A DNA stretch of 64,000 nucleotides from positions 1-64,000 of the IMG/VR virus record IMGVR_UViG_3300028536_000014; one strand, given 5' to 3'. Every line of letters begins with the position of its first letter. Position 1 is the stretch's first letter. Of this stretch, positions 7,795 through 17,171 are shown one piece after another. The translations under genes were made by a program, and so were the position numbers. The notes beneath the pieces are model-generated. The model saw only the letters and a list, made by a program, of their open reading frames with translations, was not told the origin of the DNA and did no database searches.

Positions 7795-8064
7795 TTATAT
7801 CTTAATACCTTTAAATCCAAGTGCTTTGGCTGCTTTATCGCGAGGATATCCAGATCCACCAATAAAACACATCCCATCCGTTTGATAAAATTCCTCATCT
7901 TTTTCGTGATCAATGATGACACTTCCCATGTGCTTCTTGTCGTTTGATTCAACAAGGATATGTTTCGCTCCTGGTTTCTTACACAATACAACTGCTTCTT
8001 TTACAACCGCTCGATTATTACCGAACCGAACTTTGATTACATCGCCAATCTGAACTTCTTTCAC
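7795..8064 (-). CDS. Small hypothetical protein (SH3-like)
   Basis: 89 aa; IGDVIKVRFG start; early-promoter-like motif upstream at 8131. Confidence 0.6.
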   Translation of the reverse strand: MKEVQIGDVIKVRFGNNRAVVKEAVVLCKKPGAKHILVESNDKKHMGSVIIDHEKDEEFYQTDGMCFIGGSGYPRDKAAKALGFKGIKI

Positions 8065-8216
8065 TGTTGGGTTCTCCGATTTGGTTGAAGTCCATTTTAA
8101 GAGGTTTTCTTAAAAAGCCTAAGCTCATCTAGAGTATATAGAGTTATGATTTTTTAAGAATGGGATAATTCCATTCACTCAACACATCAGATAGAATTAC
8201 TCATAAGTGAGTTATC

Positions 8217-9953
8217 ATGACAGAACAAAACAAAGTTATCGAATCTGAAAAAGATGAGATAATTAGCCGTGAGTGTCGTTTCGTAATTCATGTTCCTAAA
8301 AATAAAGAACGACCAGATTTACATTTAATAAAAGAACGTGTACACTGGAAAAGCGGTCGTTCAGAACCACGTTTACGTTGGATCAAAAATTTCACAAGAC
8401 CATTTTGGATCACTAACAAGAACTATCAAACTCACAAGCAAAAGAAAGAAGTTGAGTCGATTGATAGATTAACGCAACATAATTGTACGCAATCTGATTT
8501 AAGAGATAAGATAGCTACTGCATTAGGATTTGATTATTCACAAAACCATATTCGTAAATTAGCAAATAGTCCTTACTTATACGGAACTGAAATTGGTAGT
8601 CAAGCTATTATCAAACACCAATATCAAACTGCTAATAAAACGCATAATACTCAGTTCTCGGTCATGATGTTTGACATTGAAACCGATATGTTAAATGGTA
8701 CACAAGAACCTATCATTACCACAGCAGCATTTGGTAATGAACTTTATATTGGTGTCACTAAAGATTTCATAAAAGGAATTGTTGATCCTGAAACAAACTT
8801 TAGAGAAAAATGCATACAATATATTTCAGAGTTTACTGACATCTCTAAATATGTTATTACTTATATCGAAGCAAATGGCACTGTCGATCTGATTCGTAAA
8901 GCATTTGATTGGATACATATTCGTAAACCTGACTTTCTTGCAATTTGGAATATAGATTTCGATATTCCAAAGATTTTGGATACTCTGAAACGCTATGGTG
9001 TTGATCCTCGAGATATTCTCTGCGATCCGTCTGTACCAGAACCGGCTAGACTTTGTCAGTACAAGGAAGGACTTAGAAAGAAAAGAAAAGCCAATGGTGC
9101 TGAATATCCAATCGATTATGCTGATCAATGGCACAGTCTATTATTGACAGCTAGTTTCTATGTTATTGACGCGATGTGTGTTTATAGACTATTACGTTTA
9201 TCCAAACAAAAACAAAATTCTTATGGTTTAGATGCAACATTGGATCGAGAACTAGGAGTTCGAAAATTGAATTTCAAAGAAGCCGAAGTCTATAAGAAAG
9301 ATCGTTGGCATATTTTCATGCAGAAGAATTTCAAAATAGAATACATGGTCTATGCGTTATTCGATTCTCTCTCCATGAAATTGTTAGATGATAAAACGTT
9401 AGATCTCTGTTTTACTATCCCTAGTTTTGCAGGTGATACTCATTTTGCAAAGTGTAATTCAAAACCGAAGATGATTGCAGATATGCTTCATTTCTTCGCA
9501 TTAGAAAGAGGATATGTTCTTAATTCCGTTGGTGAACAGAAAGATCCAATAGAAGTCAAGGAAACAATAGTAATAGAAGAAGGCGCAGAAAGAGAACCTT
9601 CTATAGAAGGAGAACCTGAGACATTATCATTATTGGATTGGATTATGACCTTACCAGCACATTTAGTAGTGCCTGGATTACCACTTGTATATGAAAATCT
9701 TCATATACGCACTAAGTTAAGAGCGTTTGTATACGACAGTGACTGCGTATCTGCCTATCCAACCTGTACATCAATACTTAATGTTTCTAAGAGTACAACG
9801 AAACGCGAAATTGTAGATATCAATGGAATTGAAGAATCTGTTTTTAGACGACAGAATATCAACTTATGTTCTGGTTATGTTAACTCATTAGAGTATGGTA
9901 AAGAGATGTTTGGATTACCAAATCTATTTGAATTGAACGAGTTAATTGATTAA
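8217..9953 (+). CDS. Split family-B DNA polymerase, exonuclease/N-terminal subunit (phiKZ gp82-like)
   Basis: ExoI FDIETD, ExoII WNIDFDIP, ExoIII YALFDS, PolB motif A YDSDCVSAYP; motifs B and C absent, as expected for the split phiKZ PolB. Confidence 0.9.
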   Translation: MTEQNKVIESEKDEIISRECRFVIHVPKNKERPDLHLIKERVHWKSGRSEPRLRWIKNFTRPFWITNKNYQTHKQKKEVESIDRLTQHNCTQSDLRDKIATALGFDYSQNHIRKLANSPYLYGTEIGSQAIIKHQYQTANKTHNTQFSVMMFDIETDMLNGTQEPIITTAAFGNELYIGVTKDFIKGIVDPETNFREKCIQYISEFTDISKYVITYIEANGTVDLIRKAFDWIHIRKPDFLAIWNIDFDIPKILDTLKRYGVDPRDILCDPSVPEPARLCQYKEGLRKKRKANGAEYPIDYADQWHSLLLTASFYVIDAMCVYRLLRLSKQKQNSYGLDATLDRELGVRKLNFKEAEVYKKDRWHIFMQKNFKIEYMVYALFDSLSMKLLDDKTLDLCFTIPSFAGDTHFAKCNSKPKMIADMLHFFALERGYVLNSVGEQKDPIEVKETIVIEEGAEREPSIEGEPETLSLLDWIMTLPAHLVVPGLPLVYENLHIRTKLRAFVYDSDCVSAYPTCTSILNVSKSTTKREIVDINGIEESVFRRQNINLCSGYVNSLEYGKEMFGLPNLFELNELID

Positions 9954-10765: not shown

Positions 10766-11539
10766 TTACGGTGTTTGAATGTGAAGGTATTTCAATAAAC
10801 GTTCTCTGGCATCCTGTTTCCCAAAATTAAAAACAGGGATATTAAGATGATGAGCAACTGCGATAACATGACTTGAATTACCAGTCTTTGGAGATCTAAT
10901 TTTAGGATCTTCACATCCGTCTTCTGTCCAAACAACAACGAATTGTGCAAGACTCTTAAGATTTTGTCCACAAACAAGACGAACATTTTTAGCCAAGAAT
11001 TTCTTTACTGTATCTTTCATGTCGTCAAACTTCGGAAAGAATTGTTTAGCAAAATACATTGCTTCTTCTGAAGTAAAGGTCAATTTTGATTGGCTATCAG
11101 CAAAATTACGCCAAGGAATAATAACCTCTTTATGTTTAGCATCCATGAACATTTTGTCAGGACCATCGAAGGCGCTAGTACGAACTGTGTAACCTCGTTG
11201 ATCCAATATGTCTCTGATTTCTTTCAACGCTGCTAGCGCCGTTTCTGGGACTTCTGCATTTCCGGTTCCGACGTACGGTCTGTAGAAAATAGGCGGGTCC
11301 ACAGAAAAGTCACGAGGTACCTCAGGAGCATTCCGACGAGAATTACCGCCGAAACGAGAAAAACCACCAGACTGAGAACCGGCATTCTTACGATAATTGT
11401 TAGAAGAATAATTATTCCCGCCAGTATAAGAACCACGCTGGTCTTGGTGTGTGGATGATTCTTTTGGTGCCGAAGGAGCAGAGTATTCTTGAAATCCTTT
11501 GCTTTCGTATCCAGATGAGTTTGATTCTTGGTCACTCAT
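10766..11539 (-). CDS. SLOG/DprA-Smf-like nucleotide-binding protein with N-terminal disordered region
   Basis: YVGTGNAEVP...GYTVRTSAFDGPD...VVVWT...TGNSSHVIAVA pattern typical of phage SLOG proteins; first ~75 aa S/G/N/R-rich. Confidence 0.65.
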   Translation of the reverse strand: MSDQESNSSGYESKGFQEYSAPSAPKESSTHQDQRGSYTGGNNYSSNNYRKNAGSQSGGFSRFGGNSRRNAPEVPRDFSVDPPIFYRPYVGTGNAEVPETALAALKEIRDILDQRGYTVRTSAFDGPDKMFMDAKHKEVIIPWRNFADSQSKLTFTSEEAMYFAKQFFPKFDDMKDTVKKFLAKNVRLVCGQNLKSLAQFVVVWTEDGCEDPKIRSPKTGNSSHVIAVAHHLNIPVFNFGKQDARERLLKYLHIQTP

Positions 11540-11555
11540 TACGCCCTCTTTTTAT

Positions 11556-12866
11556 TTATGTCAGTACAGAACGAAGATCAACTTCTGCAGTTGACAACAC
11601 TTTGCCGTGCATAGCCTTTAACGACTGGTTCAGGATGAGATGTGAAACTTCCGTTAGTGGAATGACTAAACCTTCCTTATATTGGGAAAGCGCACGTCCA
11701 GAACACATTCGACATAGTCGATCGCCAGGACCTGCTTGACAATACGCTGGTGAACGTATAATCACGCTCTGGTCTAAATAATGGTTAGCATCTTCTATTT
11801 TTTCTATTAGTTTCATTTCAGTCTTTTCAATGATGGTACGACCAACCAACATCCCGATCGTATCTTTGGTATAGACTTTCTTGAGACCCAGTGTTGTTCC
11901 ACAATCTTCCATATCGATGGAATAGTTACTTCCTATACGAATCACTGATTTAGATACCACACCACCGTTGATGGTTTCTGTTCCACGTGAATAAGAACCA
12001 AAACGAGCACCGTTTAAAGATGCTGTATATTCAACTGGATCGGTTGGTTGACCTTCTTCCAACGTTCTGGTAATGGGAACGATAGGATCTTTCGGATCCA
12101 AACGTTCGGGTATACCAATAGCTAAAAACATTTTCTTTCTGGAAACATCCAGAACTTTTCCTTTATAGAAAGTTCCAAAGGCCTGATCATCTTTAAGCCA
12201 TTCACGATCAAAAGCTTTAAGTTTATTTTCATATTCAGCAAATACAGTAGGATCATTCAGGTTACTACCATATTCATTTAAGAGCTGTGTTCTATAGGCT
12301 GCTAACTCTGGAGACTTTGTAATACCTTTACGAGTAGCCGACCAGTTAGTAATGGGTGCAAATTGTTCAAGATAAACTAAACTGTCTCGAAACTTTAGAT
12401 ATTCATCAACATAAATTTTAGCATTGTCTCTGATTTCACCAGACTTAGGAGTGTCAATTAATCGAGATGCGATATACTTCTCATGGTTTTGGACACTTAA
12501 TTTTCCATTATCAAACGGATACTTAGGTCCAAAATTTGGTAGAATAATGACTGCATTGAAAATAAGATTTCCAATACAAGTTTCGAAAGACTCCTTGATA
12601 TTAGGCATCCAACTCGAATCTACTTTAATTCTTTCTTTGAAATGAAAGAGAGGTTCTTTCGTTAGACTATCATCAATTGTTTCAAGCGTTCCATCTTTAT
12701 TAATGAATCGATAAGCTGGATTAAAACTAATGATTCTTAAAAAATAAGTATTTTCAAGATAAGCATCTGATTTTTCTTTCGTTACACAGAAAGCTGAAAA
12801 TATCCAAGATAGATTATTCGCTAGACCAGCTTGAAGTGCTCTTTTAAGATAATCGTGTCTTTTCAT
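11556..12866 (-). CDS. Virion RNA polymerase beta' C-terminal subunit (phiKZ gp80-like)
   Basis: Bridge-helix-like GSYSRGTETINGG, EDCGT, SPAYC and LCRMC zinc motifs. Confidence 0.85.
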   Translation of the reverse strand: MKRHDYLKRALQAGLANNLSWIFSAFCVTKEKSDAYLENTYFLRIISFNPAYRFINKDGTLETIDDSLTKEPLFHFKERIKVDSSWMPNIKESFETCIGNLIFNAVIILPNFGPKYPFDNGKLSVQNHEKYIASRLIDTPKSGEIRDNAKIYVDEYLKFRDSLVYLEQFAPITNWSATRKGITKSPELAAYRTQLLNEYGSNLNDPTVFAEYENKLKAFDREWLKDDQAFGTFYKGKVLDVSRKKMFLAIGIPERLDPKDPIVPITRTLEEGQPTDPVEYTASLNGARFGSYSRGTETINGGVVSKSVIRIGSNYSIDMEDCGTTLGLKKVYTKDTIGMLVGRTIIEKTEMKLIEKIEDANHYLDQSVIIRSPAYCQAGPGDRLCRMCSGRALSQYKEGLVIPLTEVSHLILNQSLKAMHGKVLSTAEVDLRSVLT

Positions 12867-13788: not shown

Positions 13789-14415
13789 ATGTCAAAGAAG
13801 ACAAGCTTTCCCACAAACAAACGTGTATCTCGCACGATCATGCAGGCTGAAGAACATAAATTTCCATTTCCTGTTTCAATACCAACCACTCAACGAACTG
13901 CGATTTCTAAAGAAGCTCGCAAACTCTCTCAACATTCAAAGCCTAATGTTCGCTCCCAACCTCGAACAACAGAATTAGAATGGAATACATTTAACGGGCT
14001 TTATCAATCAATAGCCAAAGGTATTCTGGAATTTTCTGAAGCAATTTTCCATAATTTAAAAGCCGTTGAAGCAAATAAGGAACATACGGGTGAAAAGGTT
14101 GATCCTGTTTTTCTTCGATTTGTTCAACAGGCTATTCAAGATTGTGAAACATTCTCAAAAGAATTGGTTCTTATAAAAGATCGTCATAAGACCAAAGAAG
14201 GTCAATTAGTGACTAATGATGAGATGGAAGAGTATTATGCACTCGGTGAAGCTTATTACAGTTTCTTCGAGCGATTCAAAACGATCGCTTTCCAAGCATC
14301 AGTCGAAATTACTGCTTACTTATCTTCGGAAGTTACTAACGTTGATGAAAATCAGAATCTTCAGAATCTAGTCGCAAATGCAACCAATACAATTTCCTCT
14401 ATAACAACAACTTAA
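13789..14415 (+). CDS. Conserved phiKZ-like hypothetical protein
   Basis: 208 aa ORF, divergent operon. Confidence 0.7.
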   Translation: MSKKTSFPTNKRVSRTIMQAEEHKFPFPVSIPTTQRTAISKEARKLSQHSKPNVRSQPRTTELEWNTFNGLYQSIAKGILEFSEAIFHNLKAVEANKEHTGEKVDPVFLRFVQQAIQDCETFSKELVLIKDRHKTKEGQLVTNDEMEEYYALGEAYYSFFERFKTIAFQASVEITAYLSSEVTNVDENQNLQNLVANATNTISSITTT

Positions 14416-14423
14416 AGCAAAAC

Positions 14424-16052
14424 ATGAACGAACATATTGAAGGTAGTGAAACTGGACAGACTGCAGTTGAACCATCAGTCATTGTAACTGAGGTAACTTC
14501 TTCTCCGTCTGTTGCAACTGCAACAGACGGAATTCAGCAGACAGATGCGGACTATCTTCAGGAACCAGATCCGCAAAAAACTGATCGATCAGAAGTTTCA
14601 GAATTTTCTTCTGAAGCACCAGAACCAACTTATAGTAAACGTCCCAATCAGAACGTATTTCTTGATTCGGTAGTCTCTAAGGATAATCCTGATCCTGCCG
14701 GCATTTCAATATCGCTTCCTAGTGATACTTCGACACGAACAGAAGAAGTCATTACTAATATTCCAAATATCGACGTGTCAGGAACCGAACAGGGAACCAA
14801 GTGGGCTCAAGCTGTACAAGCTGCTCTTGGCTTGAATTCATATGAAGATGTCTTCCTGTCAACACTGGAAGACCAAAATGCTGATTTTCATCAGAGCTTG
14901 GAAGTCAATGGAACAAAATTTGGTTCTAATGAAGTCAAATTCAGAGAACGCCAAAATACCTCCTTTGACGGTGAAGCAGCTGTTCTTCGTACTATTTCAC
15001 ATTTGGGGCTTGGAAGCACTTGGAATACCGGACTTTACAATACTGGTATTTGGATTACGTTCAAACCACCCACTGAAGAAGATCTAGTTGAGCTTTATCG
15101 TCAACTTACTGCAGATCAGATTGAAATGGGACGGATGTCTTATGGATTGGCATATGCTAACACTAGCTCGTATCATATCGAACGGTTATGCCGATTTGCA
15201 CAACAACATATTTATCGCATTAATGCAAATCCTGATGAAATTGGTCCGGCCAATATTCTTGACCATATCAAATCTCAGGATATCACATCACTGTTATGGG
15301 GACTTGCTTGTACAATGTTCCCTAAAGGTTTCAACTATAGCAGAGCTTGCATGGTTGATCCTGAAAAATGTCAACACGTTACAAATGAAATTCTGAATCT
15401 AAGAAAATTGCAATTAGTCAATCGTGCAGGTTTGACAGATCGTCAGAAAGCTCATATGGCTGAACACCGTGGTGGAACTAAGATTACTGTTAAGGATCTG
15501 CAATCCTACGGATCTGAGATGACACGAGCCTCTTTCCATCGAGTTGTTGTCAACGAAGGTGAGAAAGACGAAATTACAATTAATTTACGTTCACCTTCTA
15601 TAACTGAGTATATCCAAACAGGTCACCGTTGGATTGACGACATGGTCAATAATGTCGAACAGGTTTTAGGTTCCACTGGTACTGTGGAAGAAAAGAATAA
15701 ATTGATCGATATGAAATCTCGCGCTACAATCATGCGTCAGTATTGTCATTGGGTTAGTTCGATTGAACTTGACACCAATCAAATTACCGATAGGGCTTCT
15801 ATCGAAAAGGTATTGAATAACATCAGTGGTGATCAAAATATTCGTGAAACATTCTTAACGGAAGTGAAGAAATTCATTGAGAACTCTTCGGTTTCAGTTG
15901 TCGGTATACCCACCTATGATTGTCCTAAATGTGGTAAACCTAATGAAGGTAATATTACCTTTCCGTATCGGACCAATATGATTCCGATCGATGTCATCCA
16001 ACTTTTTTTCGTCCTGCTTACTCAGAAACGCAGGGATCTGGAGAACAGATAA
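14424..16052 (+). CDS. Conserved core protein (phiKZ gp77-like), probable tail/baseplate-hub assembly chaperone with Cys motifs
   Basis: 542 aa; CMVDPEKC, INLRSPSITEY and CPKC motifs reminiscent of T4 gp26-type hub chaperones; slippery site near 3' end. Confidence 0.6.
   Translation: MNEHIEGSETGQTAVEPSVIVTEVTSSPSVATATDGIQQTDADYLQEPDPQKTDRSEVSEFSSEAPEPTYSKRPNQNVFLDSVVSKDNPDPAGISISLPSDTSTRTEEVITNIPNIDVSGTEQGTKWAQAVQAALGLNSYEDVFLSTLEDQNADFHQSLEVNGTKFGSNEVKFRERQNTSFDGEAAVLRTISHLGLGSTWNTGLYNTGIWITFKPPTEEDLVELYRQLTADQIEMGRMSYGLAYANTSSYHIERLCRFAQQHIYRINANPDEIGPANILDHIKSQDITSLLWGLACTMFPKGFNYSRACMVDPEKCQHVTNEILNLRKLQLVNRAGLTDRQKAHMAEHRGGTKITVKDLQSYGSEMTRASFHRVVVNEGEKDEITINLRSPSITEYIQTGHRWIDDMVNNVEQVLGSTGTVEEKNKLIDMKSRATIMRQYCHWVSSIELDTNQITDRASIEKVLNNISGDQNIRETFLTEVKKFIENSSVSVVGIPTYDCPKCGKPNEGNITFPYRTNMIPIDVIQLFFVLLTQKRRDLENR
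16004..16010 (+). promoter_or_regulatory. Putative -1 programmed ribosomal frameshift site (U UUU UUC)
   Basis: In-phase X XXY YYZ heptamer in the 14424 ORF; the -1 frame is open from 15953 to 16537 and is the frame of the next ORF. Confidence 0.65.
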
Positions 16053-16537
16053 GTAAATACCTTGTAGGTCATCCGGACTATGGTCGTCACATTGATCCGG
16101 CTTCGATCTTGCAAAGTGTTCTGGGTGCGGATGTTATTACCGGTAGCATAGAGATACAACAAACGATGATGGACGTTTATGAAACTATTTATAACGTCTT
16201 TAATCATCTTAAGAATTTCAAAAGTCCTCCAGCTTCGAGGAGACCTTTAGCTAGCGTTGCTTTCCATAAAGGTGAAGATTTTACTACAGGAAGTCTATTG
16301 GAAGATACGATGCGCATATTTCGTGATCTCCCAATTAAAGATATTTTCGGTATTGACTACTTACAGTTTATGAAACTACCGGTTGATATCGTAGAAATGA
16401 TGGTTAAGATGGCTCGTGAAAAACATGAAAATGAATCTAAAACAGCCGCTAAAGCAGATCATGCATTAAAATCATCACTGCGAGAAGAACAACAAAGACA
16501 TGCCGATGCATTAAAAGGTCGGAAAATGATTCGATAA
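16004..16537 (+). CDS. C-terminal extension (GT-like) of the gp77-like chaperone, probably made by -1 frameshift; ORF track calls it from TTG 16109
   Basis: Reads FFRPAYSETQGSG...LQSVLGADV...FGIDYLQFMKLPVDIVEMM; no SD-supported start. Confidence 0.6.
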   Translation, partial: FFRPAYSETQGSGEQISKYLVGHPDYGRHIDPASILQSVLGADVITGSIEIQQTMMDVYETIYNVFNHLKNFKSPPASRRPLASVAFHKGEDFTTGSLLEDTMRIFRDLPIKDIFGIDYLQFMKLPVDIVEMMVKMAREKHENESKTAAKADHALKSSLREEQQRHADALKGRKMIR

Positions 16538-16540
16538 ATG

Positions 16541-16575
16541 ACATACACCTACAGGTAATTCCTGTAGGTGTATGT
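16541..16575. terminator. Bidirectional terminator hairpin
   Basis: 15-bp perfect inverted repeat acatacacctacagg / cctgtaggtgtatgt. Confidence 0.8.
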
Positions 16576-16586
16576 TTATGTTTGTT

Positions 16587-17171
16587 TTAAGGTATCGTGT
16601 TGAACAAAATTACATGTTCAATAGCGGTATGTTTAATTTCTTCTGTTGTATAAACTGCTTTTAAAGATGGGTCATAAATTTTGTCACCATCCCAATAAAC
16701 AAAATGAGAAAGCGTTTTATAGTTTTTTGATGGAACTTTAAGAATAGCTTCACGTTTCCATATGTATAAAACTGGTAAACTAAATCCTCTACTAGAGAAT
16801 CCAACAACCCACTGATAATCTTCTCCTTCATTCATTCCTAAAGCAGTAAAGATTTCGTGTAATTTATTGTTGTATGAACCGTTATGCTGAATAAATGAAG
16901 TAAGAGTGCTTCCCAATAACTCTGCGATTTCTCGATAATCAATTCGCATTACCATAGCCATACAAGCGATAAGACAATCGTGTTTATCAGCTTTTTGTTG
17001 TACCAATTTAGGTGGTTTTAGATGACGTTCAAGTTCATCTACTCCTTTCACAAGGAGTTCATGATGTTGAAATGATTCTTCCACCTGAGTATTCTTCCAA
17101 AAACGCCAAGTGTAATATTGGGCTTTTCTGAATAGAGGAACAAGTCGCCGTATAATTTTACCAATTTTCAT
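16587..17171 (-). CDS. Papain-like (C39-type) cysteine peptidase
   Basis: QQKADKHDCLIACMAM (Q..C), HFVYWDG (H), IYDPS (D). Confidence 0.65.
   Translation of the reverse strand: MKIGKIIRRLVPLFRKAQYYTWRFWKNTQVEESFQHHELLVKGVDELERHLKPPKLVQQKADKHDCLIACMAMVMRIDYREIAELLGSTLTSFIQHNGSYNNKLHEIFTALGMNEGEDYQWVVGFSSRGFSLPVLYIWKREAILKVPSKNYKTLSHFVYWDGDKIYDPSLKAVYTTEEIKHTAIEHVILFNTIP

What the first reader, a model, noticed from the sequence alone, without database searches (positions are those of the whole stretch)
14424..16537. Probable programmed -1 frameshift producing a G/GT-like chaperone pair in the chimallivirus core
The 542 aa gene ends ...CTT TTT TTC (L-F-F), an in-phase U UUU UUC heptamer at 16004-16010. 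The -1 frame has its last upstream stop at 15950-15952 and stays open to 16537. It contains no SD-supported start (only a bare TTG at 16109). A weak stem (tcctgc...gcaggg) follows the slip site. This is the classic architecture of tail-assembly chaperones (lambda G/GT), predicting a ~700 aa fusion. The two parts loosely resemble T4 gp26/gp51-type hub chaperones. I am not aware of this frameshift being annotated in phiKZ-like phages.
Basis: partly seen in the sequence, partly recalled or inferred. Interest (0 to 1): 0.7.

Follow-up and report, generated by a model that had tools for sequence, protein, structure and literature searches.

The report
Conserved -1 frameshift in chimallivirus gp77
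A core gene of the nucleus-forming jumbo phages (phiKZ gp77, distantly like T4 baseplate-hub chaperone gp26) carries a conserved slippery T-run that very probably lets ribosomes shift back one base and add a hidden ~150-190 residue domain, which current genome annotations miss or truncate.

Summary
The 542-aa gene (14424-16052) has an in-phase T TTT TTC at 16004-16010. The -1 frame is open from 15953 to 16537 and has no credible start of its own.

Comparison makes recoding close to certain:
- In 86 related sequences (phiKZ, Goslar, SPN3US, 13 other GenBank phages, 70 IMG/VR contigs; 20-43% protein identity), the downstream ORF is always in the -1 frame.
- That frame is never interrupted between the T-run and the 0-frame stop.
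- The first Phe codon is always TTT. The base before it is T in 72 of 78 sequences, across eight different amino acids.
- 53 of 78 have no ATG, GTG or TTG before the first conserved motif of the extension.
- The extension is a conserved helical domain.

The window predicts a 704-aa product (529 + 175). phiKZ "gp076.4" is the tail of this extension.

The upstream protein has a T4 gp26-like fold (gp26 is a hub-assembly chaperone). It is not a lambda G/GT-type chaperone: the expression logic is the same, the family is different. I found no conserved stimulatory RNA structure.

Ribosomal frameshifting (about 0.7) cannot yet be separated from RNA-polymerase slippage (about 0.2). No annotation or paper I could search describes it. 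I rate it a new member of a known kind.

The parts
13789..14415 (+). Upstream 208-aa gene in the position of phiKZ gp78. It ends 8 nt before the gp77-like gene, so it is probably in the same operon. Function unknown.
   Evidence: ORF list. Synteny with phiKZ gp78-gp77 and with Goslar gp080-gp081. PHROG hits of unknown function only and no Pfam hit.
14424..16052 (+). Zero-frame gene, 542 aa. It is the orthologue of phiKZ gp77, Goslar gp081 and Chimalliviridae core gene cg18. The N-terminal ~60 residues are disordered. Residues ~210-531 have a T4 gp26-like (baseplate hub assembly) fold with a CxxC zinc ribbon and a C-terminal helix (524-541) that carries the FF.
   Evidence: phrog_4585, E 4e-94. 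241 phage records by tblastn. AF2 pLDDT 85.6. BFVD and AFDB fold hits to 'baseplate hub subunit / assembly chaperone' proteins. hhalign to T4 gp26 C-terminus. Core-genome table.
16004..16010 (+). Slippery heptamer T TTT TTC in X XXY YYZ phase (codons CTT TTT TTC = L527 F528 F529).
   Evidence: The same site is conserved in 86 related sequences: TTTTTTT in 46, TTTTTTC in 20 and variants in 12 of the first 78. The 8 further named phages also carry it.
16010..16537 (+). -1 frame extension of 175 codons plus TAA (16535-37). It is a conserved helical domain (PHROG 12109 type) with a long C-terminal helix. It would be joined to residue 529, giving a 704-aa product.
   Evidence: phrog_12109, E 1e-14. 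Alignment of 55-78 orthologous extensions with motifs HV..P..FG, YE..yGI.nH, PL..V..h.ED and fGlS.EFL.LPR. AF2 pLDDT 86.9.
16011..16052 (+). Dual-coding overlap. The 0 frame encodes the end of the C-terminal helix (VLLTQKRRDLENR*). The -1 frame encodes the linker RPAYSETQGSGEQI.
   Evidence: In relatives the -1 frame never has a stop here, although only 34% of equally long -1 windows elsewhere in the gene are stop-free.
16012..16035 (+). 6-bp stem UCCUGC / GCAGGG with a 12-nt loop, 1 nt after the heptamer. It is probably not a stimulator.
   Evidence: z -0.36 for the region. No conserved structure in 78 sequences or in the 10 closest.
16040..16051 (+). GGAG followed 5 nt later by ATA in the -1 frame, overlapping the stop (ATAA). 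This is the only conceivable independent, non-canonical start. It is listed as the basis of a rival reading.
   Evidence: It is not conserved: start codons in relatives are scattered from codon 2 to codon 151 of the extension and almost never have an SD.
16540..16576 (+). Intrinsic-terminator-like hairpin (16-bp stem, then a T-rich tail) 3 nt after the stop of the extension. It marks the end of the transcription unit.
   Evidence: In a phiKZ-like phage, a Nanopore cDNA contig carries a loose poly(A) end just after the extension's stop.

Best explanation
The gene is decoded in two ways.

Most ribosomes read CTT TTT TTC in frame and stop at 16050-52. This gives the 542-aa protein, whose last helix ends ...FFVLLTQKRRDLENR.

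A minority slip back one base while tRNA-Phe occupies the P site (TTT) and the A site (TTC), re-pairing on T TT and T TT. They then read CGT CCT GCT ... in the -1 frame as far as 16535-37. This gives a 704-aa protein: residues 1-529 of gp77 joined to a conserved 175-aa helical domain that has no start codon of its own.

Shown here:
- The signal and the overlap.
- Their conservation at nucleotide level across the family.
- Conservation of the extension as protein.
- The absence of usable starts.
- An unbroken RNA-seq contig across both parts in a phiKZ-like phage.

Inferred:
- That the shift is ribosomal.
- That it is a minority event. This is my assumption by analogy with lambda G/GT, because no stimulator was found.
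- That the two isoforms act together in baseplate-hub or tail assembly. This rests on the T4 gp26-like fold and on the protein's absence from virion structures. The extension would supply an extra binding or oligomerisation module to a fixed fraction of molecules.
For: 1. In-phase T TTT TTC, with the -1 frame open from 15953 to 16537.

2. In all related loci the -1 frame spans the 0-frame stop, with at least 17 codons before it and 134-183 after. The +1 frame is mostly closed. The same holds in phiKZ and in Goslar, SPN3US, JM-2012, PS1, Yong MS32, Miami, PS119XW and Sureiya.

3. Nucleotide-level constraint:
   - The first Phe codon is TTT in 78/78, against 38% TTT among 1,222 other Phe codons in these genes. 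GC ranges from 0.30 to 0.64.
   - The preceding third-position base is T in 72/78, against 26% background, in ten codons for eight amino acids.
   - After clustering 86 sequences at 45% identity, 31 of 33 clusters have the T throughout and 28 have TTTTTTN throughout.

4. -1 frame stops lie 1-5 codons upstream of the heptamer in 22/78 sequences but never between the heptamer and the 0-frame stop.

5. 53/78 have no ATG, GTG or TTG between the heptamer and the first conserved motif. Only one has an SD-like start. L015 has no start codon before codon 151 of 154.

6. The extension is conserved from just after the overlap to its end and folds confidently.

7. T4 gp26 shares the C-terminal CxxC...FFxLL motif but has no such extension. 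It encodes FF as TTC TTT and stops three codons later.

8. RNA-seq contigs of a phiKZ-like phage run unbroken through the site and the extension, with no consensus indel at the T-run.

9. A terminator follows the extension.
Against: - There is no direct evidence for the long protein. No junction peptide or ribosome-profiling data could be examined.
- No conserved downstream hairpin or pseudoknot and no upstream SD-like stimulator was found. Efficiency may therefore be low.
- 12 of the first 78 sequences and PS119XW lack the full X XXY YYZ heptamer (for example ACG TTT TTT, GTG TTT TTT, CTT TTT ATT, ATA TTT TTC). They would need single-tRNA slippage.
- When the second codon is TTC, the preceding codon tends to be NTT, which keeps at least 7 T in a row (18/26 against 19/54; Fisher p 0.008, not corrected for phylogeny). 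This pattern would also suit polymerase slippage.
- The sequences are related, so the counts overstate independence.
- RNA contigs cannot show minor indel variants.
Confidence: 0.7

Rival explanations
1. Programmed transcriptional slippage. The phage (or host) RNA polymerase occasionally adds one extra U while copying the T7-T8 run. Standard translation of that mRNA subpopulation then yields the same 704-aa fusion.
For: - The conserved element is a homopolymer: 7 T in 49, 8 T in 17, 6 T in 8 and 5 T in 4 of 78 sequences.
- TTC in the second codon is associated with NTT before it, which keeps the run at 7 or more.
- L069 keeps 7 T by extending the run in the 3' direction, out of heptamer phase.
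- No RNA stimulator for ribosomal shifting was found.
- From my own knowledge: chimalliviruses use unusual multisubunit RNA polymerases of unknown fidelity, and the potyvirus P3N-PIPO site was long taken for ribosomal frameshifting before polymerase slippage was shown.
Against: - From my own knowledge: runs of 5-7 T are short for known bacterial transcriptional slippage, which usually needs 8-9 or more.
- The run starts at the third codon position in 72/78, as a ribosomal heptamer requires. However, the conserved FF fixes most of that phase anyway.
- Lineages with only T5 keep the architecture.
- Consensus RNA contigs from three runs show no inserted base at the run. This excludes only a majority event.
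Confidence: 0.2
2. The downstream ORF is an ordinary separate gene. It would start at a non-canonical or weak start (in the window, ATA 16049 behind GGAG, TTG 16109 or ATG 16166), or by termination-reinitiation at the upstream stop.
For: - A GGAG lies 5 nt before an ATA that overlaps the stop, in an ATAA arrangement reminiscent of ATGA coupling.
- The well-conserved part of the extension begins just after the 0-frame stop.
- All databases annotate a separate small gene.
Against: - Annotated starts differ wildly between relatives, giving 76-150 aa products 17-215 nt after the stop.
- 53/78 have no canonical start before the first conserved motif, and only one has an SD-like start.
- L015 has no start until codon 151 of 154.
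- This reading does not explain the invariant -1 frame relation, the stop-free -1 stretch back to the T-run, or the nucleotide-level conservation of the T-run.
Confidence: 0.04
3. There is no recoding. The arrangement is a sequencing or assembly error in a homopolymer, or a decaying gene fusion. The -1 ORF is not expressed.
For: Homopolymer runs are classic sites of indel errors. The window is a metagenome assembly.
Against: - A second assembly matches exactly.
- The same frame relation is seen in 85 other genomes, including isolate phages sequenced independently.
- The extension is conserved as protein at 12-33% identity and folds confidently, which means long-term purifying selection.
- None of the top 150 family representatives from 1.84 billion proteins is an in-frame fusion.
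Confidence: 0.01

Closest known systems
Lambda G/GT and the conserved -1 frameshift of tail assembly chaperones (also P2 E/E+E', which uses T TTT TTG); recalled from my own knowledge of Levin et al. 1993 and Xu et al. 2004
   Same: - A -1 shift on a heptamer near the 3' end of a tail-morphogenesis gene.
- The downstream ORF has no start of its own.
- Two products share an N-terminus and differ by a C-terminal extension.
- The gene product is apparently non-structural.
- In P2 the slip site is also a U-rich heptamer, in a contractile-tail phage.
   Different: - No sequence or fold relation to tail assembly chaperones.
- The short form is 542 aa, not about 100-140 aa.
- The gene is not between the tube and tape-measure genes.
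- Partners are unknown.
T4 gp26 (baseplate hub protein; listed as 'hub assembly chaperone' in PMC3004832, Table 2; Pfam T4_baseplate PF12322)
   Same: - The predicted fold of residues ~210-531 matches about 20 gp26-type 'baseplate hub subunit / assembly' proteins (BFVD: probability 1.0, TM by target 0.5-0.58). AFDB clusters named 'baseplate protein' also match.
- Shared C-terminal motif [AI]-[VI]-P-x(1-3)-C-P-x-C-G ... FFxLL.
- T4 also makes two products from gene 26, but through an annotated internal start, 26'.
   Different: - Sequence similarity is below Pfam's threshold. The window protein gives no hit, and 2 of 53 relatives give weak hits (E 0.008).
- gp77 has about 200 extra N-terminal residues.
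- T4 gp26 stops three codons after FF, encodes FF as TTC TTT, and has no extension.
T7 gene 10A/10B and E. coli dnaX tau/gamma (from my own knowledge)
   Same: - A single heptamer-driven -1 shift late in a gene sets a fixed ratio of two isoforms.
- T7 10B is likewise a C-terminally extended minor form made at a U-rich site (G GUU UUC).
   Different: - Different proteins and functions.
- dnaX uses strong stimulators (an upstream SD and a downstream hairpin) and shortens the product. No stimulator was found here.
Potyvirus P3N-PIPO and other polymerase-slippage sites (from my own knowledge)
   Same: A conserved homopolymer at a fixed phase gives access to an overlapping ORF without a start codon. 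It was first read as ribosomal frameshifting.
   Different: RNA virus and viral RdRp. Here the system is DNA-templated transcription. No minor-variant RNA data are available to decide.

Membership tests
Programmed -1 ribosomal frameshift site | Slippery X XXY YYZ heptamer in the zero-frame phase | tested here: met
   T TTT TTC at 16004-16010, with codons CTT TTT TTC.
Programmed -1 ribosomal frameshift site | An overlapping -1 ORF, open from the heptamer, long, and without its own initiation signal | tested here: met
   Open from 15953 to 16537. The first starts are a bare TTG at 16109 and ATG at 16166. Family-wide, 53/78 have no start before the first conserved motif.
Programmed -1 ribosomal frameshift site | Conservation of the slip site and frame relation in orthologues beyond what the protein sequence demands | tested here: met
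   86/86 have the -1 relation. First Phe codon TTT in 78/78 against 38% background. Preceding base T in 72/78 against 26%. 31 of 33 clusters at 45% identity have the T throughout.
Programmed -1 ribosomal frameshift site | Stimulatory element (downstream hairpin or pseudoknot 5-9 nt away, or an upstream SD-like sequence) | tested here: not met
   The window stem is 1 nt from the heptamer and the region has z -0.36. Family mean z is -0.57 against -0.39 for controls. No consensus structure in the 10 closest sequences. Only a sub-clade (L010-L013, L015) has a well-spaced 8-11 bp hairpin. A stimulator is not obligatory for low-level shifting.
Programmed -1 ribosomal frameshift site | Trans-frame protein detected, and the shift shown to be translational | not testable with these tools
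   Only RNA contigs were available. They show an unbroken contig across the site and no majority indel. The one raw-read run had no phage reads.
Lambda-type tail assembly chaperone pair (G/GT) | Gene pair located between the major tail/tube gene and the tape-measure gene | tested here: not met
   Window neighbours are a gp78-like unknown, unknown PHROGs and a DNA helicase on the other strand. In phiKZ the neighbours are gp78, gp79 (a head protein) and the gp75 helicase.
Lambda-type tail assembly chaperone pair (G/GT) | TAC sequence family or fold in the upstream product (about 100-150 aa) | tested here: not met
   No Pfam hit. The best TAC structure (HK97, 2ob9) has E 3.4 and probability 0.14. 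The protein is 542 aa. Atlas 'GpE' and 'TAC GT' leads are at chance level.
Lambda-type tail assembly chaperone pair (G/GT) | A -1 frameshift near the 3' end gives a C-terminally extended second product | tested here: met
   Inferred from sequence and comparison, as above.
T4 gp26-like baseplate hub proteins (Pfam PF12322 T4_baseplate) | Match to the family HMM above its gathering score | tested here: not met
   No hit for the window protein. 2 of 53 relatives match weakly (best E 0.0079).
T4 gp26-like baseplate hub proteins (Pfam PF12322 T4_baseplate) | Shared fold with gp26-type proteins | tested here: met
   BFVD: about 20 'baseplate hub subunit / assembly' proteins of 226-310 aa, E 3e-4 to 2e-2, probability 0.98-1.0, TM by target 0.46-0.58. 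AFDB clusters named 'baseplate protein' also match. Both sides are predicted models. No solved structure matches.
T4 gp26-like baseplate hub proteins (Pfam PF12322 T4_baseplate) | C-terminal zinc-ribbon CxxC followed by the FFxLL end motif | tested here: met
   hhalign of the 53-sequence profile against T4 gp26 aligns CPxCG...FFxLL (probability 28%, 28 columns).
T4 gp26-like baseplate hub proteins (Pfam PF12322 T4_baseplate) | Required for baseplate hub assembly | not testable with these tools
   Indirect evidence only. The protein is not named in the phiKZ or Goslar virion cryo-EM papers. The Churi homologue is listed as a non-structural protein present at 15 min.

The most novel reading that the evidence does not exclude
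The gp26-like protein and its frameshift extension are the contractile-tail jumbo-phage counterpart of the G/GT chaperone system. That would be an independently evolved, or extremely diverged, two-isoform chaperone that couples hub or tape-measure assembly to tube assembly. It would explain why T4-type and phiKZ-type phages appear to lack a classical frameshifted TAC.

A variant of this reading is that the shift is made by slippage of the phage's own non-canonical RNA polymerase. That would be the first programmed transcriptional recoding in a jumbo phage.
Probability: 0.2. Interest if true: 0.8.

Novelty: new member of a known kind. Interest (0 to 1): 0.62.

Why it matters
The gene is one of the core genes shared by all nucleus-forming jumbo phages (cg18), and its function is unknown. 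If the shift is real:

- Every chimallivirus encodes a conserved domain of about 150-190 residues that is currently unannotated, or split into arbitrary small ORFs such as phiKZ gp076.4, Goslar gp082 and SPN3US gp226. Knock-out, Tn-seq, proteomic and structural studies of these model phages would then be using wrong gene models at this locus.
- It extends the rule that tail-morphogenesis chaperones are made as two frameshift isoforms to a different protein family, the T4 gp26-like hub assembly proteins. This gives a concrete handle on the poorly understood hub-assembly step.
- It offers a simple test of whether recoding in these phages is ribosomal or due to their unusual RNA polymerases.

Tried and rejected
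- Megablast of the region against GenBank phages found nothing. The window is only 20-43% identical in protein to known phages.
- Pfam on the three proteins gave no family.
- HMM search of both profiles against PDB sequences gave only chance hits.
- Foldseek against PDB and VIA-align wide on the gp77 model found no solved relative. The HK97 TAC hit is insignificant.
- The extension model gave no informative fold outside its own family. ESM Atlas leads for it (P2 GpE, Gp51_C, T4_baseplate, TAC GT) are at chance-level scores and are not used as evidence.
- hhalign of the extension against T4 gp51, T4 gp26 and the gp77 profile showed no relation. gp77 against T4 gp51 aligned only a CxxC.
- Complex prediction of gp77 with the extension returned 'no answer' and is not evidence either way.
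- The search for a conserved stimulatory RNA was negative.
- RNA data: only assembled contigs were available for phiKZ-like RNA runs, and the single raw-read run had no phage reads. Minor U-insertions could therefore not be measured.
- Literature: seven searches and several full-text look-ups found no mention of this frameshift or of a function for phiKZ gp77. Churi proteomics supplements list the gp77 homologue but nothing usable for the extension.
Full report
**Observation**

The window is part of a 244,725-bp IMG/VR virus contig with terminal repeats.

The gene at 14424..16052 encodes 542 aa. Its codons CTT (16002), TTT (16005) and TTC (16008) place T TTT TTC at 16004-16010 in the X XXY YYZ phase.

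Thirteen more codons follow before TAA at 16050-52.

The -1 frame has TAA at 15950-52 and is open to TAA at 16535-37. After the heptamer, its first canonical starts are:
- a bare TTG at 16109;
- ATG at 16166 and 16169, behind only GAGA.

There is also a GGAG (16040-43) 5 nt before an ATA that overlaps the stop.

A strong terminator-like hairpin (16540-76) follows the -1 ORF.

An independent assembly of a soil-metagenome run reproduces 14400-16600 exactly. The 7-T run is therefore not an assembly slip.

**Comparative test: frame and heptamer**

The protein belongs to phrog_4585 and has relatives in 241 GenBank phage records, all below 35% identity. I examined 86 sequences in total:
- the window itself;
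- 6 GenBank relatives;
- 70 distinct IMG/VR loci;
- phiKZ itself;
- 8 further named phages: Goslar, SPN3US, Halocynthia phage JM-2012, PS1, Yong MS32, Miami, PS119XW and Sureiya.

In every one, the ORF after the big gene lies in the -1 frame. That frame is open across the 0-frame stop, with at least 17 codons before it and 128-183 after.

At the conserved FF, 13-21 codons before the stop, 68 of the first 78 sequences have an in-phase TTTTTTN heptamer:

| Heptamer | Count |
|---|---|
| TTTTTTT | 46 |
| TTTTTTC | 20 |
| TTTTTTA | 1 |
| TTTTTTG | 1 |

**Comparative test: nucleotide-level constraint**

This is not just a consequence of conserved phenylalanines.
- The first Phe codon is TTT in 78/78. 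Only 38% of the other 1,222 Phe codons in these genes are TTT, and gene GC ranges from 0.30 to 0.64.
- The base before it is T in 72/78, against 26% T at third positions generally. The preceding codon varies over ten codons for eight amino acids.
- After clustering 86 sequences at 45% identity, 31 of 33 clusters carry that T in all members.
- Stops in the -1 frame come as close as 1-5 codons upstream of the heptamer in 22 sequences. They never occur between the heptamer and the 0-frame stop. Only 34% of equally long -1 windows elsewhere in the gene are stop-free.
- T4 gp26 shares the C-terminal motif but has no extension. It writes FF as TTC TTT and stops three codons later.

**The downstream ORF is not an independent gene**

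- The first ATG in the extension frame ranges from codon 2 to codon 151. L015 has no ATG, GTG or TTG before codon 151 of 154.
- 53 of 78 sequences have no canonical start between the heptamer and the first conserved motif. Only one has a start with an SD-like sequence.
- Annotators have consequently called ORFs of 76-150 aa starting 17-215 nt after the stop. phiKZ gp076.4 is the last 80 codons of a 165-codon extension.
- No record shows a joined CDS.
- The extension is nevertheless a conserved domain, with motifs HV..P..FG, YE..yGI.nH, PL..V..h.ED and fGlS.EFL.LPR.
- It folds confidently (pLDDT 86.9) into a helical domain with a long C-terminal helix.

In a phiKZ-like phage (IMG/VR locus L092), RNA-seq contigs from three runs cover gp77, the slip site and the extension without a break. 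They show no consensus indel at the T-run. A Nanopore cDNA contig carries a loose poly(A) end just after the extension's stop.

**Identity of the proteins**

phiKZ gp077, Goslar gp081 and RAY gp267 are core gene cg18 of the chimallin-encoding phages, listed as hypothetical.

The AF2 model of the window protein is good (pLDDT 85.6, pTM 0.83). The FF sits at the start of the last helix, 524-541, so the shift replaces that helix.

No solved structure matches. Predicted-structure libraries link residues ~210-531 to gp26-type proteins:
- About 20 T4-type 'baseplate hub subunit / hub assembly' proteins of 226-310 aa (probability 0.98-1.0, TM by target about 0.5-0.58).
- AFDB clusters named 'baseplate protein'.
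- Two relatives touch Pfam T4_baseplate weakly.
- hhalign aligns the CPxCG...FFxLL end with the C-terminus of T4 gp26.

T4 gp26 is listed as a hub assembly chaperone (PMC3004832).

gp77 and Goslar gp81/82 are not named in the phiKZ or Goslar virion cryo-EM papers. The Churi homologue was detected as a non-structural protein at 15 min.

The extension has no recognisable relatives outside the family. Atlas leads are at chance level.

**Mechanism**

The best-supported reading is a programmed -1 ribosomal frameshift on T TTT TTY, with tRNA-Phe in both sites. In the window it gives a 542-aa and a 704-aa (529 + 175) product.

The variants lacking a full heptamer still allow perfect single-tRNA re-pairing on T TTT or T TTC. 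Examples are G TTT TTT, T TTT ATT and A TTT TTC.

I found no conserved stimulator:
- The window's stem is too close and not conserved.
- The family as a whole folds no better than controls.
- Only one sub-clade has a well-spaced hairpin.

I therefore expect a low, fixed shifting rate, as for lambda G/GT. That is inference.

The main rival is polymerase slippage on the T-run, which would give the same protein. Points in its favour:
- the homopolymeric nature of the signal;
- a tendency to keep at least 7 T;
- the unknown fidelity of the phage RNA polymerases.

Points against it:
- the short run lengths, down to T5;
- the conserved phase;
- the absence of a majority insertion in RNA contigs.

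Independent initiation and sequencing error are effectively excluded by the comparative data.

**Comparison with known systems**

The logic is that of G/GT and P2 E/E+E': two isoforms of a non-structural tail-morphogenesis protein.

The family tests for a lambda-type TAC fail on position, size and fold.

The upstream protein is best described as a distant, enlarged relative of T4 gp26. That link rests on predicted fold and a short motif, not on sequence significance.

Searches of the open literature found no description of this frameshift. Subscription-only papers could not be searched.

**Verdict**

This is a real, strongly conserved recoding signal in a chimallivirus core gene. It is most likely a -1 ribosomal frameshift, it is unannotated, and it is a new member of a known kind.

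Limits:
- There is no direct protein evidence.
- The ribosomal-versus-transcriptional question is open.
- The functional assignment rests on predicted structures.

Noticed in passing
L090 (phiKZ NC_004629) 11443-11960, minus strand: phiKZ ORF PHIKZ076.4 (80 aa) is only the C-terminal half of a 165-codon -1 frame extension of gp77. The 218-nt 'intergenic' gap between gp77 and gp076.4 is coding in that frame. The same holds for Goslar gp082, SPN3US gp226 and others.
   Followed up: yes
L010-L013 and L015, about 7-9 nt after the heptamer: One sub-clade of close relatives has an 8-11 bp hairpin, ACTCAGCG...CGCTGAGT. It encloses the 0-frame stop at the spacing typical of frameshift stimulators. It is absent from the window and from most other lineages.
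   Followed up: partly
86 related loci, codon before FF: When the second Phe codon is TTC, the preceding codon is usually NTT (18 of 26, against 19 of 54 when it is TTT). The T-run therefore stays at 7 or more. A minimal ribosomal heptamer does not explain this, and it fits polymerase slippage too. The test is not corrected for phylogeny.
   Followed up: partly
window 16040-16052: GGAG followed 5 nt later by ATA, overlapping the stop as ATAA. It looks like a mutated ATGA start/stop coupling signal. It is not conserved in relatives.
   Followed up: yes
L091 (T4) 7803-8429, minus strand: T4 gp26 ends ...CPECGKTHAHVIRGLKEFFELL*. This is the same CxxC...FFxLL C-terminal signature as chimallivirus gp77. 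T4 makes a second product (26') by internal initiation rather than by frameshifting.
   Followed up: partly
window 14504-14531: A 28-nt stretch near the 5' end of the gene matches its own reverse complement at 93% (a palindromic element inside the disordered N-terminal coding region).
   Followed up: no
window 13789-14415: The gp78-like upstream gene (208 aa) stops 8 nt before the gp77-like start and is syntenic in all relatives inspected. The Atlas model is a low-confidence helical bundle, and its hemerythrin-like and TrbJ-like structural neighbours are not significant. Function unknown.
   Followed up: partly
window 16540-16576: A 16-bp perfect-stem hairpin lies between convergent genes: the extension ORF on the + strand and the 194-aa ORF at 16587-17171 on the - strand. 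It is probably a bidirectional terminator.
   Followed up: partly
BFVD hits J7KJQ2 (phiEaH2, 686 aa) and A0A8S5P0M5 (687 aa); phrog_8054: The SPN3US/phiEaH2 lineage has a much longer N-terminal region in this protein (about 650-690 aa) but the same C-terminal frameshift architecture. The variable N-terminus may be lineage-specific.
   Followed up: partly
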